Assembly: GCF_006345805.1 (NCBI RefSeq) | Contig: NW_021824197.1 | Location: 1-18,361 of the forward strand | Direction of reading: 5' to 3' | DNA length: 18,361 bases | Source of the DNA: Octopus sinensis | Lineage: Eukaryota | In this document: positions 4,341-9,671 of the stretch, in pieces | Layout of the letters: each line of letters begins with the position of its first letter | How positions within the stretch are numbered: position 1 is the stretch's first letter | Notes under the pieces: model-generated | Told to the model about the DNA's origin: nothing | Seen by the model: only the letters and a program-made list of their open reading frames with translations | The model's database searches: none | Position numbers and translations under genes: made by a program

Positions 4341-4886
4341 GAGACAGAGAGCAGTGCATGCCATCAAAGTGACACTGGGGTAAAATATACGCAGCCCAGT
4401 ATACCCATCATGACCACCTGTCTGATAAGGGTACACCAGGCACATGCATCACAGCCATATGTGCACGATATGGTGATCTGATATCAAAATAAACAGCACA
4501 TGACCTTGCAGGTGGGGCCCAGTTAGAAATTTCTTCAGGTCGAGTAACCCATCCCACTCGAAAGGGGGTTGTTTAAGGATGTTGAACGAAACACCCATGT
4601 TTCCCAAAGATGAATTTTCCAAACCCCAAAGAATCTCTCTCAACACATGGCTATGATGCTCCCCCACTACTTCTGTTCGTGATCAGAGATGCACATATCG
4701 TCAGCCACTAAGGGACATGCTCAACTGATTAAGGTCAAACAACTGACAAGCAAATCTGTGGTATTGAGCAGAATATTTGCTGTAACCCATCTTTTATACC
4801 AAGACAAAACAATGTACATGATAATACTTCCAATCAGTTAAGATCAGAAGCCACGAGAGCCACTGCCTGGTACTGCATCAGGGCAT
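4341..4886 (-). mobile_element. ~546-bp non-coding interspersed element; parent of the satellite
   Basis: Starts exactly at the end of (ATT)n, ends at GCATCAGGGCAT, and its terminal 288 bp and 139 bp are re-copied downstream. No convincing ORF. I recall a similar (ATT)n-flanked dispersed repeat from octopus DNA (unverified). Orientation is inferred. Confidence 0.6.
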
Positions 4887-5175
4887 CGTTTCGAAAGGTG
4901 AATTATCCTGATCCCAAAGATTTCCTCTCAATACATGGCTATGATGCTCCTCCACTACTTCTGCTCATGATCAGAGATGCACATATTGTCAGCCACTAAG
5001 GGAAATGCTCAACTGGTTAAGGTCAAACAACTGACAAGCAAATCTGTGGTATTGAGCAGAATATTTGCTGTAGCCCATCTTTTATACCAAGACAAAATAA
5101 TGTACATGATAACACTTCCAATCAGTTAAGATCAAAAACCATGGGAGCTACTGCTTGGTACTGCATCAGGGCATT
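4884..5175. repeat. 288-bp direct re-copy of 4596-4886, ~9% diverged
   Basis: Junction at the CAT microhomology (4884-4886 vs 4596-4598); about 27 differences by manual count. Confidence 0.9.
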
Positions 5176-8100
5176 AGCAAATCTGTGGTATTGAGCAGAT
5201 ATTTGCTGTAGCCCATCTTTTATACCAAGACAAAATAATGTACATGATAACACTTCCAATCAGTTAAGATCAGAAGCCATGGGAGCTACTGCTTGGTACT
5301 GCATCAGGGCATTAGAAAATCTGTGGTATTGAGCAGAATATTTGCTGTAGCCCATCTTTTATACCAAGACAAAATAATATACATGATAACACTTCCAATC
5401 AGTTAAGATCAAAAACCATGGGAGCTACTGCTTGGTACTGCATCAGGGCATTAGAAAATCTGTGGTATTGAGCAGAATATTTGCTGTAGCCCATCTTTTA
5501 TACCAAGACAAAATAATGTACATGATAACACTTCCAATCAGTTAAGATCAAAAACCATGGGAGCTACTGCTTGGTACTGCATCAGGGCATTAGAAAATCT
5601 GTGGTATTGAGCAGAATATTTGCTGTAGCCATCTTTTATACCAAGACAAAATAATGTACATGATAACACTTCCATCAGTTAAGATCAAAAACCATGGGAG
5701 CTACTGCTTGGTACGCATCAGGGCATTAGAAAATCTGTGGTATTGAGCAGAATATTTGCTGTAGCCCATCTTTTATACCAAGACAAAATAATGTACATGA
5801 TAACACTTCCAATCAGTTAGATCAAAAACCATGGAGCTACTGCTTGGTACTGCATCAGGGCATTAGAAAATCTGTGGTATTGAGCAGAATATTTGCTGTA
5901 GCCCATCTTTTATACCAAGACAAAATAATGTACATGATAACACTTCCAATCAGTTAAGATCAAAAACCATGGGAGCTACTGCTTGGTACTGCATCAGGGC
6001 ATTAGAAAATCTGTGGTATTGAGCAGAATATTTGCTGTAGCCCATCTTTTATACCAAGACAAAATAATGTACATGATAACACTTCCAATCAGTTAAGATC
6101 AAAAACCATGGGAGCTACTGCTTGGTACTGCATCAGGGCATTAGAAAATCTGTGGTATTGAGCAGAATATTTGCTGTAGCCCATCTTTTATACCAAGACA
6201 AAACAATGTACATGATAACACTTCCAATCAGTTAAGATCAGAAGCCATGAGAGCCACTGCCTGGTACTGCATCAGGGCATTAGAAAATCTGTGGTATTGA
6301 GCAGAATATTTGCTGTAGCCCATCTTTTATACCAAGACAAAACAATGTACATGATAACACTTCCAATCAGTTAAGATCAGAAGCCATGAGAGCCACTGCC
6401 TGGTACTGCATCAGGGCATTAGAAAATCTGTGGTATTGAGCAGAATATTTGCTGTAGCCCATCTTTTATACCAAGACAAAACAATGTACATGATAACACT
6501 TCCAATCAGTTAAGATCAAAAACCATGGGAGCCACTGCCTGGTACTGCATCAGCGCATTAGAAAATCTGTGGTATTGAGCAGAATATTTGCTGTAGCCCA
6601 TCTTTTATACCAAGACAAAACAATGTACATGATAACACTTCCAATCAGTTAAGATCAAAAACCATGGGAGCCACTGCCTGGTACTGCATCAGGGCATTAG
6701 AAAATCTGTGGTATTGAGCAGAATATTTGCTGTAGCCCATCTTTTATACCAAGACAAAACAATGTACATAATATCACTTCCAACAATTAAGATCAGAAGC
6801 CATGGGAGCTACTGCTTGGTACTGCATCAGGGCATTAGAAAATCTGTGGTATTGAGCAGAATATTTGCTGTAGCCCATCTTTTATACCAAGACAAAATAA
6901 TGTACATGATAACACTTCCAATCAGTTAAGATCAAAAACCATGGGAGCCACTGCCTGGTACTGCATCAGGGCATTAGAAAATCTGTGGTATTGAGCAGAA
7001 TATTTGCTGTAGCCCATCTTTTATACCAAGACAAAACAATGTACATAATATCACTTCCAAACAATTAAGATCAGAAGCCATGGGAGCTACTGCTTGGTAC
7101 TGCATCAGGGCATTAGAAAATCTGTGGTATTGAGCAGAATATTTGCTGTAGCCCATCTTTTATACCAAGACAAAACAATGTACATAATATCACTTCCAAA
7201 CAATTAAGATCAGAAGCCATGGGAGCTACTGCTTGGTACTGCATCAGGGCATTAGAAAATCTGTGGTATTGAGCAGAATATTTGCTGTAGCCCATCTTTT
7301 ATACCAAGACAAAACAATGTACATAATATCACTTCCAAACAATTAAGATCAGAAGCCATGGGAGCTACTGCTTGGTACTGCATCAGGGCATTAGAAAATC
7401 TGTGGTATTGAGCAGAATATTTGCTGTAGCCCATCTTTTATACAAGACAATACAATGTACATAATACACTTCCAAACAATTAAGATCAGAAGCCATGGGA
7501 GCTACTGCTTGGTACTGCATCAGGGCATTAGAAAATCTGTGGTATTGAGCAGAATATTTGCTGTAGCCCATCTTTTATACCAAGACAAAACAATGTACAT
7601 AATATCACTTCCAAACAATTAAGATCAGAAGCCATGGGAGCTACTGCATGGTACTGCATCAGGGCATTAGAAAATCTGTGGTATTGAGCAGAATATTTGC
7701 TGTAGCCCATCTTTTATACCAAGACAATACAATGTACATGAAAACATTTCCAATCAGTTAAGATCAAAAACCATGGGAGCTACTGCTTGGTACTGCATCA
7801 GGGCATTAGAAAATCTGTGGTATTGAGCAGAAATATTGCTGTAGCCCATCTTTTATAACAAGACAAAACAATGTACATGATATCACTTCCAATCATTAAG
7901 ATCAAAAACCATGGGAGCTACTGCTTGGTACTGCATCAGGGCATTAGAAAATCTGTGGTATTGAGCAGAATATTTGCTGTAGCCTCTTTTATAACAAGAC
8001 AAAACAATGTACATGATATCACTTCCAATCAGTTAAGATCAAAAACCATGGGAGCTACTACTGCTTGGTACTGCATCAGGGCATTAGAAAATCTGTGGTA

Positions 8101-8890
8101 TTGAGCAGAATATTTGCTGTAGCCCATCTTTTATAACAAGACAAAACAATGTACATGATATCACTTCCAATCAGTTAAGATCAAAAACCATGGGAGCTAC
8201 TGCTTGGTACTGCATCAGGGCATTAGAAAATCTGTGGTATTGAGCAGAATATTTGCTGTAGCCCATCTTTTATAACAAGACAAAACAATGTACATGATAT
8301 CACTTCCAATCAGTTAAGATCAAAAACCATGGGAGCTACTGCTTGGTACTGCATCAGGGCATTAGAAAATCTGTGGTATTGAGCAGAATATTTGCTGTAG
8401 CCCATCTTTTATAACAAGACAAAACAATGTACATGATATCACTTCCAATCAGTTAAGATCAAAAACCATGGGAGCTACTGCTTGGTACTGCATCAGGGCA
8501 TTAGAAAATCTGTGGTATTGAGCAGAATATTTGCTGTAGCCCATCTTTTATACCAAGACAAAATAATGTACATGATAACTTCCAATCAGTTAAGATCAAA
8601 AACCATGGAGCTACTGCTTGGTACTGCATCAGGGCATTAGAAAATCTGTGGTATTGCAGAATATTTGCTGTAGCCCATCTTTTATACCAAGACAACAATG
8701 TACATGATAACACTTCCAATCAGTTAAGATCAAAAACCATGGGAGCTACTGCTTGGTACTGCATCAGGGCATTAGAAAATCTGTGGTATTGAGCAGAATA
8801 TTTGCTGTAGCCCATCTTTTATACCAAGACAAAACAATATACATGATAACACTTCCAATCAGTTAAGATCAAAAACCATGCTTGGTACTC
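5040..8890. repeat. Tandem satellite array, 139-bp monomer, 28 consecutive copies (last truncated)
   Basis: AAATCTGTGG starts at 5040, 5179, 5317, 5456, 5595, 5731, 5868, 6007, 6146 ... 8506, 8642, 8777 (spacing 135-140, mode 139). The monomer equals the terminal 139 bp of the 4341-4886 element. Confidence 0.97.
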
Positions 8891-8918
8891 TATGCTTGGT
8901 ACTCCATGCTTGGTACTC
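8877..8918. repeat. Three tandem copies of the 14-mer YATGCTTGGTACTC at the satellite/LINE junction
   Basis: 8877-8890, 8891-8904, 8905-8918; derived from satellite sequence CCATG|ggagctactg|CTTGGTACT with a 10-nt deletion between TG microhomologies. Confidence 0.92.
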
Positions 8919-9671
8919 CGATTTTGCTTTGTGTTTGTACACGGTGACTCGAAATCTTACCCAGAGATCTCAAAAGAAAACTAGTCAGAACTTCAACTCG
9001 CTATTATGACTAAGGTACCATATTTTTGTTTTTGCACAGAGTATTGTTCTAGAGAGTGTCTGCCGAAGCATGTGGAAATTAGAAATTTGTTTTAAAAGTA
9101 ATTTGGTATTAAGATGAATATTATGTATGTTACAAAAGCTCTTTTGATAATGTTCGCCGATTTTAATGTTTTTGAAATGGCATAGACGATAATATTGTAG
9201 GATATAAGCAGTTCTCATGAGCACCATCTCTTCAATTTCTTCTATTTTTGAATTTCCTGGTATCTGAGCCAGGTAGGAATCAGCCCCTTTTACTATTATT
9301 CCTAGGGAACCTATGACAACAGATACAGATTTTGTCTCGTGGTTCCACATTTTACCAGTTTCTATTATATTTCAAGATCTTTATACTTGCTCAGTTGTTT
9401 GGTAGGTCTTGACAAATGCATTTATATCGATTGAAGAGAGATGGTCCTTGAATATAAGGTCTGGCCTATTTGCATCTATCTTTCTGTCAGTTCTAGCACT
9501 GAAGTTCCACAGGAATAAAATGTGATCATTTCCAAGCTTTGGGTCTGGTTTGTGTTTCCACCAGTTTATATCATAGGACAGGGCCAGGTCCTTCAAGATG
9601 ACCCAGTGTATATACTGTGCCGCTCTATCGTGCCTCTTGAGATACTCTGTAGGGACAAGAAGTCTGCTACC
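8919..9671 (-). mobile_element. 5'-truncated R4/Dong-like non-LTR retrotransposon: RLE endonuclease end plus 3' UTR
   Basis: Minus-strand translation LLVPTEYLKRHDRAAQYIHWVILKDL...WWKHKPDPKLGND...LWNFSARTDRKIDANRPDLIFKD (RPD motif of the PD-(D/E)xK RLE), frameshifts, then MWNHETKSVSVVIGSLGII...EMVLMRTAYIL. The 5' end abuts (AAT)n. Confidence 0.88.

What the first reader, a model, noticed from the sequence alone, without database searches (positions are those of the whole stretch)
4341..9671. 5.3-kb composite bounded by (ATT)n on both sides: possible single retrotransposition with serial template jumps that seeded a satellite
Seen, left to right (cDNA order for minus-strand RNAs): (ATT)n, the 546-bp element, a 288-bp re-copy ending at the same terminus, 139-bp re-copies ending at the same terminus, three 14-bp stutters, the tail-less 3' end of an R4/Dong-like LINE, its 5' truncation, then (ATT)n. 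Every complete re-copy stops at GCATCAGGGCAT(T) but restarts at a different internal point. The satellite does not resume beyond the LINE, as it should if the LINE had simply inserted into the array. The 288-bp copy differs ~9% from its neighbour, too much for a fresh DNA duplication, which fits a second RNA template. Established: R2-group RTs jump end-to-end between templates and add non-templated bases. Inference: an (AAT)n-targeting LINE and its non-coding partner element build concatemers by run-off and re-priming, which could be a retro-route to satellite DNA. Competing model: the 546-bp element inserted at the start of the LINE's own (AAT)n tail and later amplified at the DNA level.
Basis: partly seen in the sequence, partly recalled or inferred. 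Interest (0 to 1): 0.78.

Follow-up and report, generated by a model that had tools for sequence, protein, structure and literature searches.

The report
Retroelement-head tandem array in octopus microsatellite
A 27-copy, 139-bp tandem array in an octopus-type genome is built from the first 139 bases of a ~550-bp (AAT)n-tailed mobile element lying next to a dead Dong/R4-like LINE; its first junctions sit exactly at the element's true 5' end, which points to reverse transcriptase, but the array then grew by ordinary DNA-level duplication, so this is a nice example of a known route from mobile element to satellite, not a new one.

Summary
The described anatomy is real at the stated coordinates. 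An independent full-length copy in Octopus bimaculoides (85% identical) is flanked by AAT repeats. It shows the 546-bp unit is a dispersed, (AAT)n-tailed non-autonomous retroelement, sense on the window's minus strand, and that GGGCAT is its true 5' terminus. The LINE piece carries the C-terminal restriction-like endonuclease region of an R2-supergroup, Dong/R4-like element.

The single-event reading is not supported.
- 26 of 27 monomer junctions share a derived C>A change absent from copy 1, the 288-bp copy, the first monomer and the O. bimaculoides copy.
- Monomer variants are blocky: adjacent units differ by 2.65 substitutions against 4.77 for all pairs, reached by 0 of 10,000 permutations. 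They are also recombinant.
- The array is far more homogeneous than copy 1 against the 288-bp copy.
- That 9% gap splits 12:14 on the outgroup, so no second RNA template is needed.

Only three junctions need a founding event. Two lie exactly at the RNA 5' end plus one extra base. This fits RT run-off joined to another copy, either resident DNA or RNA.

The same terminus|AGCAAATC junction is encoded twice in an O. bimaculoides gene model. The seed is therefore old or mobile.

Verdict: partly supported, a new member of a known kind.

The parts
4276..4340 (-). (AAT)n tail and target tract at the 3' end of the full-length element; reads (TTA)n on the + strand
   Evidence: TRF period 3, 21.7 copies, 93% matches. 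It abuts the element's 3' end ...CTCTCTGTCTC|AAT. The same arrangement is seen in the O. bimaculoides copy.
4341..4886 (-). Full-length non-autonomous (AAT)n-tailed retroelement, 'copy 1', 546 bp. Sense 5' end is ATGCCCTGATGC at 4886.
   Evidence: 85% identical over its whole length to L004 70546-71100, whose ends are flanked by AAT repeats. No tRNA or Rfam match.
4887..5175 (-). Second copy. It keeps the exact 5' terminus and lacks the 3' 257 bp. Junction J1 to copy 1 is GGGCAT|C|GTTTCG.
   Evidence: Alignment. 26 substitutions against copy 1, 12 derived on copy 1 and 14 on this copy.
5176..8773 (-). 26 tandem monomers of about 139 bp, equal to the element's first 139 nt. Every junction is GGGCATT|AG(C/A)AAATC (junction J2 and its descendants).
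   Evidence: TRF period 139, 27.7 copies, 96% matches. Junction list, haplotype table, neighbour-correlation test.
8774..8875 (-). Last, incomplete monomer
   Evidence: nhmmer match ends at 8907, model position 538 of 546.
8876..8919 (-). 14-bp unit CCATGCTTGGTACT repeated 3.1 times, derived from the monomer by a 10-bp deletion. Junction J3 to the LINE.
   Evidence: TRF period 14, 3.1 copies, 93%; sequence.
8920..9175 (-). LINE 3' untranslated region with no (AAT)n tail at 8920
   Evidence: It follows the position of the family's stop codon (...LRKVLSM* in relatives). Window 9097-9019 is 71% identical to the Logan contig L001. No similarity to the 546-bp element beyond shuffled controls.
9176..9671 (-). 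5'-truncated, decayed C-terminal coding region of a Dong/R4-like LINE: zinc-knuckle-proximal region plus restriction-like endonuclease (..ANRPDL..)
   Evidence: One frame with two stops. 56% identical to O. bimaculoides A0A0L8FXY1, E 1e-51. The relative P0007 matches the R2 protein 9nl2 at residues 879-1054.
9672..9748 (-). (AAT)n target tract upstream of the truncated LINE; reads (ATT)n on the + strand
   Evidence: TRF period 3, 26.3 copies, 94% matches.

Best explanation
One (AAT)n microsatellite has collected, all in the same orientation, a 5'-truncated Dong/R4-like LINE and copies of a ~550-bp non-autonomous element. The element carries an (AAT)n tail and presumably uses that LINE group's machinery.

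Only three junctions were ever made de novo:
- J1: the exact 5' end of copy 1 joined inside a second copy.
- J2: the exact 5' end of the second copy, plus T, joined 139 nt inside a third copy.
- J3: a messy join of that third copy to the LINE 3' UTR.

J1 and J2 were made by reverse transcriptase. [quoted passage not shown]

The acceptor was either the resected top strand of a resident copy or a fragment of a second RNA. A resident-copy acceptor means successive insertions into the previous copy's tail, each with an upstream target deletion. An RNA acceptor means one event with two or three jumps. These two versions leave the same sequence, and I cannot separate them.

J2 put two homologous 139-bp segments side by side. 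Unequal crossing-over and gene conversion then expanded them to 27 units, long after the founding events.

Shown: the element's identity and termini, the LINE type, the junction positions, and DNA-level growth of the array. Inferred: RT authorship of J1 and J2, and the order of events.
For: Element and terminus: an independent full-length copy in O. bimaculoides has AAT repeats at both ends and starts at ATGCCC.

LINE type:
- Window fragment translation and its O. bimaculoides homologue.
- A relative matches the R2 protein C-terminus.
- Another relative ends in a (TA)n tail directly after its stop codon.
- Dong elements target (TAA)n (PMC3812793).
- Dong-R4 elements are abundant and recently active in Octopus vulgaris (PMC13282606).

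RT authorship of the founder junctions:
- Both J1 and J2 fall on the verified terminus with a 1-nt filler.
- R2 RT adds non-templated bases on run-off. About one third of full-length R2 5' junctions carry upstream target deletions. Site-specific R1 elements form tandem arrays by re-insertion (PMC2718515).

DNA-level growth of the array:
- The C>A change next to the junction is shared by m02-m26 and the last unit. It is absent from copy 1, copy 2, m01 and the outgroup.
- Adjacent monomers differ by 2.65 substitutions against 4.77 for all pairs, reached by 0 of 10,000 permutations. Ten adjacent pairs are identical.
- All four combinations occur at pairs of variant sites.
- The tail of copy 2 differs from m03-m07 and m25 by a single substitution. 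Copies 1 and 2 differ by 12% in the part outside the monomer.

Only the unit next to the LINE is incomplete. That is what unequal exchange between two founder units would leave.
Against: - Only one independent element copy and one gene-model translation were available, so there is no family consensus, no empty site and no second locus with DNA.
- R2-type jumps characterised in vitro land on acceptor 3' ends, not on internal sites.
- The successive-insertion version needs three upstream deletions, each removing the whole intervening (AAT)n.
- Equal branch lengths of copies 1 and 2 (12 against 14) do not show different ages.
- The same J2 junction occurs in O. bimaculoides. The array may therefore have been imported rather than built here.
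- The LINE's 3' UTR shows no similarity to the element, so the partnership rests on the shared (AAT)n and orientation only.
Confidence: 0.55

Rival explanations
1. One target-primed reverse transcription event copied copy 1, then made about 30 serial run-off and re-priming jumps (288 bp, 27 x 139 bp, 3 x 14 bp), ended on the LINE RNA, and so created the satellite directly.
For: - The block is bounded by (ATT)n on both sides, and all parts have one orientation.
- Every complete unit ends at the verified RNA 5' terminus.
- Modified R2 RT performs serial template jumping in vitro (bioRxiv 10.1101/2021.04.30.442027; title and abstract only, from the search listing).
Against: - 26 junctions share one derived substitution, which makes them copies of one junction.
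- Variants are blocky and recombinant.
- The parts have very different apparent ages: 12% between copies 1 and 2 outside the monomer, against 0-2% between neighbouring monomers.
- It needs 27 landings on the same internal base, whereas known jumps land on acceptor 3' ends.
- The same junction is already present in O. bimaculoides in its ancestral form.
Confidence: 0.07
2. The array was imported. A variant of the element that already carried tandem 139-bp heads (like the 5' monomers of mouse L1) was transcribed elsewhere. It retrotransposed into the LINE's (AAT)n tail and was 5'-truncated inside a monomer. The founding junctions arose at another locus.
For: - The unit next to the LINE is cut 12 nt short of the terminus, like an ordinary 5' truncation.
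- An O. bimaculoides gene model (A0A0L8FNA5) encodes the element's left part followed by two junctions identical to J2, including the extra T. They are in the ancestral AGCAAATC form.
- Mid-array monomers m08 and m09 carry the same ancestral-like haplotype as that model.
Against: - The one dispersed copy with DNA in hand has a single head and a clean AAT-flanked 5' end.
- Only one protein cluster in 1.84 billion representatives carries the junction, which suggests one locus, possibly the orthologue.
- The internal 288-bp partial copy would also have to be part of the master element.
- This model moves the origin problem elsewhere and does not solve it.
Confidence: 0.15
3. Purely DNA-level origin. 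Copy 1 inserted normally. Replication slippage, fork stalling with template switching, or end-joining at the fragile (ATT)n border then produced the 288-bp and 139-bp tandem duplications and the 14-bp stutter. Reverse transcriptase played no part in the junctions.
For: - Copies 1 and 2 have symmetric branch lengths, as a duplication predicts.
- One-base fillers and 14-bp stutters are also typical of replicative template switching.
- Later array growth is demonstrably DNA-level.
Against: - Two independent duplications would each need a breakpoint within about 1 bp of the element's verified 5' terminus. That is roughly (3/546)^2 for random breakpoints.
- No ATT units are retained at either junction.
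- There is no ATT-like microhomology at either restart point.
Confidence: 0.15
4. Rolling-circle reverse transcription of a circular 139-nt RNA. A ribozyme-processed, retrozyme-like monomer would generate the multimer.
For: - Constant junction and constant unit length.
- R4 and Dong elements carry 5' HDV-like ribozymes that cleave at the exact 5' end (PMC3774820).
- Animal retrozymes form tandem arrays (PMC7229834).
Against: - No Rfam ribozyme match at E<=1 on either strand.
- None of the listed hits of a loose HDV-like descriptor starts at the terminus, and the descriptor fires in 91% of shuffles.
- Monomer folding z-scores run from -1.2 to +0.6.
- CUGAUGC replaces the hammerhead CUGAUGA box.
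- The variant structure still requires DNA-level turnover.
Confidence: 0.03
5. The whole block is one LINE. The '546-bp element' would be the LINE's own 3' UTR end, with an expanded internal tandem repeat.
For: Same orientation, and no (AAT)n between the LINE and the array.
Against: - The O. bimaculoides copy has its own 5' end flanked by AAT repeats.
- There is no LINE coding sequence anywhere in 86 kb around that copy.
- The LINE UTR and the element share no similarity beyond shuffles.
Confidence: 0.02

Closest known systems
Satellites and tandem arrays derived from SINEs and other mobile elements, such as limpet PcH-Sat from a Nin-SINE (PMC11121367), and Xenopus Satellite 1 and Hydromantes Hy/Pol III from SINE-like 5' regions (table in PMC9659126)
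   Same: A segment of a short non-autonomous retroelement is amplified head-to-tail. Growth and homogenisation occur by unequal exchange.
   Different: Here the seed is still attached to its full-length parent, and both founder junctions sit exactly on the element's RNA 5' end. Only one array was seen, about 3.7 kb long, so it is not shown to be a genome-wide satellite.
Tandem R1 arrays and R2 5'-junction variation in Drosophila rDNA (PMC2718515)
   Same: - Site-specific non-LTR elements re-insert at target sequence adjoining resident copies and form head-to-tail arrays.
- Full-length 5' junctions carry non-templated bases and upstream target deletions.
- Identical junctions between tandem units were read there, as here, as amplification of one original event.
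   Different: R1 arrays consist of whole elements separated by the target-site duplication. Here the units are 3'-truncated heads with no target sequence between them.
Dong elements of the R4 clade, in Bombyx, Anopheles and Biomphalaria
   Same: A LINE with a C-terminal restriction-like endonuclease, embedded in a (TAA)n/(AAT)n microsatellite (PMC3812793). Dong-R4 families are abundant in Octopus (PMC13282606, PMC9115989).
   Different: Only about 250 C-terminal codons are present and they are decayed. Clade placement was not tested by phylogeny, and this copy has no tail.
End-to-end template jumping by R2 reverse transcriptase, and L1 chimeric retrocopies such as U6-L1
   Same: cDNA runs to the donor's 5' end, gains non-templated bases and continues on a second template.
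   Different: The documented acceptors are RNA 3' ends. Here both acceptors begin at internal positions of the element, so truncated RNAs or resected resident DNA must be assumed.
5' monomer arrays of mouse L1 (from my own knowledge)
   Same: Tandem repeats of the element's 5'-terminal, promoter-side segment, with the outermost monomer truncated.
   Different: In L1 the monomers are part of the transposing unit. The single other copy of this element seen here has one head only.
Animal retrozymes: tandem hammerhead-ribozyme repeats (PMC7229834; bioRxiv 10.64898/2026.07.22.740005)
   Same: Short tandem non-autonomous retroelement units with a fixed junction.
   Different: No ribozyme motif or significant fold was detected.

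Membership tests
R2-supergroup LINE with restriction-like endonuclease; Dong/R4 clade | C-terminal zinc knuckle plus PD-(D/E)XK restriction-like endonuclease domain | tested here: met
   - The window fragment aligns over 92% of its length to O. bimaculoides A0A0L8FXY1 (E 1e-51) and keeps ..TDRKIDANRPDL...
- The longer relative P0007 matches the R2 protein 9nl2 at residues 879-1054 (E 0.0017).
- Relatives give weak zf-RVT hits.
- In the window copy an in-frame deletion has removed the LIDxxV part of the motif.
R2-supergroup LINE with restriction-like endonuclease; Dong/R4 clade | Insertion into (TAA)n/(AAT)n with a matching 3' tail | tested here: inconclusive
   The 5'-truncation point abuts (AAT)n at 9672. 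The 3' end at 8920 has no tail, and the canonical 3' terminus of the family could not be obtained: Logan contig L001 stops about 90 nt short.
R2-supergroup LINE with restriction-like endonuclease; Dong/R4 clade | Phylogenetic placement of the reverse transcriptase within R4/Dong | not testable with these tools
   The RT domain is absent from the truncated copy, and no reference Dong or R4 sequences were available.
SINE-like non-autonomous LINE-dependent retroelement | Dispersed copies with the same discrete termini and a simple-repeat 3' tail | tested here: met
   The window copy at 4341-4886 and L004 70546-71100 share both ends and an (AAT)n tail.
SINE-like non-autonomous LINE-dependent retroelement | Pol III-type head (tRNA, 5S or 7SL) | tested here: not met
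   ARAGORN finds nothing and Rfam gives no match at E<=1. The element should therefore be called a non-autonomous retroelement, not a canonical SINE.
SINE-like non-autonomous LINE-dependent retroelement | 3' end shared with the partner LINE | tested here: not met
   The best local alignment of the LINE 3' UTR against the element scores 23, within the range of shuffled controls (mean 18.8, maximum 27). Only the (AAT)n is shared.
Tandem array evolving by unequal exchange (satellite-type dynamics) | Head-to-tail monomers with neighbour-correlated variants and recombinant haplotypes | tested here: met
   0 of 10,000 permutations reach the observed adjacent similarity, and all four combinations occur at pairs of variant sites.
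Tandem array evolving by unequal exchange (satellite-type dynamics) | Many long arrays across the genome | not testable with these tools
   - No octopus genome could be searched by DNA.
- No array in 86 kb of O. bimaculoides.
- One O. bimaculoides gene model carries the junction.
- Metagenome scans found nothing.
Single-event RT template-jump concatemer | Donor copied to its exact 5' end, with non-templated bases at the junction | tested here: met
   J1 is GGGCAT|C|GTTTCG and J2 is GGGCAT|T|AGCAAATC, both on the verified terminus.
Single-event RT template-jump concatemer | Acceptor copied from its 3' end | tested here: not met
   The acceptors start 288 and 139 nt from the element's 5' end, that is, internally.
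Single-event RT template-jump concatemer | All parts the same age, with units that are independent copies of RNA | tested here: not met
   A derived junction mutation is shared by 26 units, variants are blocky, and divergence is 12% between copies 1 and 2 outside the monomer against 0-2% between neighbouring monomers.
Ribozyme-bearing tandem retroelements (retrozymes; 5' HDV-like ribozymes of R4/Dong) | A self-cleaving ribozyme motif defining the unit end | tested here: not met
   No Rfam ribozyme hit. Among the listed hits of the HDV-like descriptor none starts at the terminus, and the descriptor is non-specific. No significant fold. HDV-like ribozymes are hard to detect, so this is a weak negative.

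The most novel reading that the evidence does not exclude
Reverse transcriptases of Dong/R4-type LINEs, on running off the 5' end of a short partner RNA, habitually continue on fragments of other copies and so create terminus-anchored tandem seeds. Such a tandem-headed element can itself be mobilised. The identical junction in O. bimaculoides would then be a second, non-orthologous locus. This would give a retrotransposition-based route for both the birth and the dispersal of a satellite.
Probability: 0.15. Interest if true: 0.7.

Novelty: new member of a known kind. Interest (0 to 1): 0.42.

Why it matters
Satellites derived from mobile elements are well documented, but the first duplication that seeds an array is almost never caught. 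Here the seed is still joined to its parent element. Both founder junctions lie on a terminus that an independent copy verifies. The locus therefore separates two steps cleanly: a junction that looks RT-made, and later growth that is clearly DNA-level.

If a genome-wide survey showed many such terminus-anchored junctions with different restart points, it would give in vivo evidence for run-off joining by an R2-supergroup enzyme. It would also supply a concrete seeding mechanism for satellites in microsatellite-rich cephalopod genomes. As it stands, this is one locus, and it fits known processes.

Tried and rejected
1. LINE 3' UTR origin of the element. Rejected: no similarity beyond shuffles, the independent copy has its own AAT-flanked 5' end, and there is no LINE nearby.
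2. tRNA, 5S or 7SL head, and known ribozymes. ARAGORN and Rfam at E<=1 found nothing.
3. HDV-like ribozyme at the 5' terminus, prompted by R4 and Dong ribozymes (PMC3774820). My loose descriptor fires in 91% of shuffles, and none of its listed hits starts at the terminus. Fold z-scores are not significant.
4. Pol III terminator idea. The derived junction form creates TTTT on the sense strand. However, the first junction lacks it, and the unit would run 2 nt past the T-run. Dropped.
5. Exact look-up of ten window ORFs in the protein collection. None is present, so the source contig and identical satellite ORFs could not be traced.
6. Logan contigs carrying the closest LINE relative (L001-L003). 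They are only 1.1 kb and end about 90 nt before the window's LINE end, so the LINE terminus stays undefined.
7. ENA contig L005. It comes from another organism. It only shows that the clade includes a (TA)n-tailed relative.
8. Two exact-pattern scans of metagenome contigs with conserved element cores. No hits.
9. Contig look-ups for O. bimaculoides proteins P0001 and P0082. Neither is on record, so orthology of the second junction-bearing locus could not be tested.
10. Using branch lengths to order copies 1 and 2 in time. The 12:14 split is uninformative under a single evolving master sequence.

Full report
**What is in the window**

The + strand reads as follows.
- (TTA)n at 4276-4340.
- A 546-bp unit at 4341-4886 ending GCATCAGGGCAT.
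- A 289-bp unit at 4887-5175, homologous to 4598-4886 and ending at the same motif.
- 26 complete monomers of about 139 bp at 5176-8773.
- One partial monomer at 8774-8875.
- A 14-bp unit repeated 3.1 times at 8876-8919.
- A 752-bp stretch at 8920-9671. Its minus strand reads in one frame, with two stops, as the C-terminus of a LINE protein.
- (ATT)n at 9672-9748.

All 28 occurrences of the terminal motif lie at unit ends. nhmmer finds no element sequence elsewhere in the window or beyond 8907. The surrounding 18 kb is dense in trinucleotide microsatellites.

**The organism and the LINE**

The LINE fragment's best relative is Octopus bimaculoides A0A0L8FXY1 (56% identity, E 1e-51). About 80 further relatives come from many animals.

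The fragment keeps ..TDRKIDANRPDL.. and ..VVIGSLG... A longer relative (P0007) aligns with the zinc-knuckle and restriction-like endonuclease part of the R2 protein, PDB 9nl2 residues 879-1054, at E 0.0017.

One relative, on a large contig from another organism, ends its ORF (...LRKVLSM*) directly in a (TA)n tail. Two further relatives, P0005 and P0014, run from the end of the ORF into YIYIYI residues, which I read as the same kind of (TA)n tail. The clade thus includes microsatellite-tailed elements.

Published work bears on three points.
- Dong elements of the R4 clade target (TAA)n (PMC3812793).
- Dong-R4 LINEs are abundant and recently active in Octopus vulgaris, with 5 families and 1129 young insertions (PMC13282606).
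- A full-length Dong element is present in the O. bimaculoides repeat library (PMC9115989).

'Dong/R4-like' is therefore reasonable. Clade membership could not be tested by phylogeny, because the RT domain is missing.

The copy is old. It has two stops, and an in-frame deletion has removed part of the nuclease motif. Its 3' UTR runs about 255 nt, to 8920. Part of it is 71% identical to a Logan contig carrying a related LINE, but that contig stops about 90 nt short. I could not establish whether 8920 is the canonical 3' end.

**The 546-bp unit is a real, dispersed retroelement, and GGGCAT is its true 5' end**

No octopus genome could be searched by DNA. I therefore joined translations of the element's stop-free stretches and searched proteins.

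This found an O. bimaculoides PP2A-B55 isoform model that has taken up a piece of the element. Through it I obtained 85.7 kb of O. bimaculoides chromosome sequence, locus L004.

L004 70546-71100 is a full-length copy, 85% identical. It reads ...agaaataataat|ATGCCCTGATGCAG...GCACTGCTCTCTCACTC|(AAT)11.... From this:
- The element's sense strand is the window's minus strand.
- Its 3' end carries an (AAT)n tail.
- It sits in AAT repeats.
- Its 5' end is the ATGCCC that reads GGGCAT on the window's + strand.

It has no tRNA-like head and no Rfam match. It shares nothing with the LINE's 3' UTR beyond shuffled controls. No LINE coding sequence lies anywhere in L004. These results reject the idea that the element is merely the LINE's UTR.

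**The array grew at the DNA level**

I aligned the 139-bp tails of copy 1 and copy 2 with all monomers.

- The base next to the junction is C (AGCAAATC) in copy 1, copy 2, the first monomer and the O. bimaculoides copy. It is A (AGAAAATC) in m02-m26 and the last unit. Those 26 junctions are therefore descendants of one mutated junction, not independent landings.
- The 14 informative sites form runs of identical neighbours: m03-m07, m08-m09, m14-m16 and m21-m24.
- Adjacent monomers differ by 2.65 substitutions on average, against 4.77 for all pairs. None of 10,000 permutations of monomer order reaches so low a value. Ten adjacent pairs are identical.
- Pairs of sites show all four combinations, so exchange between units has occurred.
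- Both ends of the array keep the same type, and the derived types lie in the middle.

This is the pattern of unequal crossing-over and conversion. It is not that of a set of cDNA copies made at one moment.

**The 9% difference does not call for a second RNA template**

Using the O. bimaculoides copy as outgroup, the 26 differences between copy 1 and copy 2 split into 12 derived on copy 1 and 14 on copy 2. A further 32 sites are shared by both against the outgroup.

Two branches of about 4.5% are what an old duplication gives. Two same-age insertions from one master would give the same.

Outside the monomer region the two copies differ by 12% (18 of about 150 sites). In contrast, the tail of copy 2 differs from m03-m07 and m25 by one substitution. 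The parts of the composite therefore have very different apparent ages. This contradicts a single event as the source of what is seen today.

**What still needs a founding event**

Only three junctions do.
- J1 is GGGCAT|C|GTTTCG. It joins the exact 5' end of copy 1 to position 288 of copy 2.
- J2 is GGGCAT|T|AGCAAATC. It joins the exact 5' end of copy 2 to position 139 of the next unit.
- J3 joins an incomplete unit to the LINE UTR. That unit is 12 nt short of the terminus, carries a 10-bp deletion and has a 14-bp triplication.

Once J2 existed, two homologous 139-bp segments lay side by side. Unequal exchange between them would produce exactly what is seen: internal units with complete ends and identical junctions, and one incomplete unit left next to the LINE.

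J1 and J2 both fall on the independently verified terminus, each with a one-base filler. For random DNA breakpoints this would be roughly (3/546)^2. No ATT units or ATT-like microhomology occur at the restart points.

The R2 literature shows three relevant behaviours (PMC2718515).
- The enzyme adds non-templated bases when it runs off a template.
- About a third of full-length R2 5' junctions carry upstream target deletions.
- Site-specific elements form tandem arrays by re-insertion next to resident copies.

I therefore favour RT authorship of J1 and J2. Two versions leave identical sequence.
- Successive insertions: each new copy enters the (AAT)n tail of the previous one, and its cDNA end joins a resected resident copy.
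- One event: two or three jumps onto 3'-truncated RNAs.

A strand-specific microsatellite target forces all insertions into one orientation, as observed. That makes pile-ups natural. The successive-insertion version, however, needs three deletions that each removed the whole intervening tail. I cannot decide between the two versions.

**The junction is older than this array, or it is mobile**

I searched a 77-residue ORF that spans two monomer junctions against 1.84 billion representative proteins. It found one hit, O. bimaculoides A0A0L8FNA5 (E 2.8e-21).

Its sequence maps onto the window in three parts.
- Residues 1-34 match the element's left part, equivalent to 4410-4511.
- Then comes ...IRSHESQCLVLHQDI|SKSVVLSRIFAVAHL.
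- Then comes FIPRQNNVHDNTSNLLRSEAMRASAWYCIRTL|ANLWY.

The last two parts are two junctions of the J2 type. Both include the extra T and are in the ancestral AGCAAATC form. Both carry the same G>A change in the terminus.

The monomer haplotype of this model resembles m08 and m09, the ancestral-like units in the middle of the window's array. O. bimaculoides thus has the same seed.

The model is not a translation of the window, and its DNA was not retrievable. It may be the orthologous locus in another species. It may instead be a second locus, in which case a tandem-headed form of the element would be mobile, or the region was duplicated. Only one such protein cluster exists, which leans towards a single locus.

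**Ribozyme idea**

R4 and Dong elements define their 5' ends with HDV-like ribozymes (PMC3774820), and animal retrozymes form tandem arrays (PMC7229834). I therefore looked for a ribozyme in the 139-nt head.
- Rfam gave nothing.
- None of the listed hits of a loose HDV-like descriptor starts at the terminus, and the descriptor was non-specific.
- Folding energies were ordinary.

This is a weak negative.

**Verdict**

The reading of the whole array as serial jumps in one retrotransposition is contradicted by the variant structure. So is the reading of the 9% divergence as evidence for a second RNA template.

The locus is a clear case of a tandem array derived from a mobile element, with the seed still attached to its parent. 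It is a new member of a known kind. The more novel reading, an RT-made and possibly mobile satellite seed, remains open. A DNA search of Octopus assemblies would settle it quickly.

Noticed in passing
window 270-503 and 1220-1453; ORF 953-1441: A mariner-type transposase C-terminal fragment (Pfam Transposase_1, E 6.5e-20). Its last 234 nt are present a second time in inverted orientation at 99% identity, 716 nt away. This could be a recent inverted duplication, a foldback, or an assembly artefact.
   Followed up: partly
L004 70546-71140 (O. bimaculoides CM046622.1): The annotated PP2A 55-kDa regulatory subunit B alpha isoform (P0081) includes an exon made of the element's 3' end plus its (AAT)n tail. 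The tail is read as a run of asparagines. This is either exonisation of the element or an annotation artefact.
   Followed up: partly
O. bimaculoides protein A0A0L8FNA5 (P0082): An 'uncharacterized protein' gene model that is entirely a translation of this element and two tandem-monomer junctions. It is almost certainly not a real gene.
   Followed up: yes
L005 10501-10660; proteins P0005, P0014: In L005, a LINE relative from another animal ends its ORF directly in a (TA)n tail with virtually no 3' UTR. P0005 and P0014 run into YIYIYI residues at the C-terminus, which I read as the same kind of tail. The clade seems to have diversified across different microsatellite targets.
   Followed up: no
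window 9672-9748: The right-hand (ATT)n has a 23-bp higher-order period, (ATT)7 plus AT repeated three times at 98%. The microsatellite itself has undergone block duplication.
   Followed up: no
window 10961-11958: A 1-kb (TGA)n-like block with extreme GC skew (+0.9). It has an internal repeat recurring about every 180-190 bp: matching stretches start at 11426, 11618 and 11798.
   Followed up: no
window 5592-5864, 7393-7529, 8503-8773: Single-base deletions cluster in a few monomers (m04, m05, m17, m25, m26). Substitutions do not cluster this way. This may reflect long-read consensus errors in the array and not real mutations.
   Followed up: no
window 14124-14420 and 14796-15104: Two + strand ORFs resemble, from memory only, the RT-proximal and GIY-YIG regions of Penelope-like elements. 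Pfam gave no hit.
   Followed up: partly
L004 35560-35633, 36202-36260, 45913-45970: Other short repeats in O. bimaculoides also abut AAT or ATT tracts, for example ...ctttatcaagcaa|(AAT)12 and (ATT)7|taaggcagtgagctggtagag.... This suggests (AAT)n tails are common to several octopus retroelement families.
   Followed up: no
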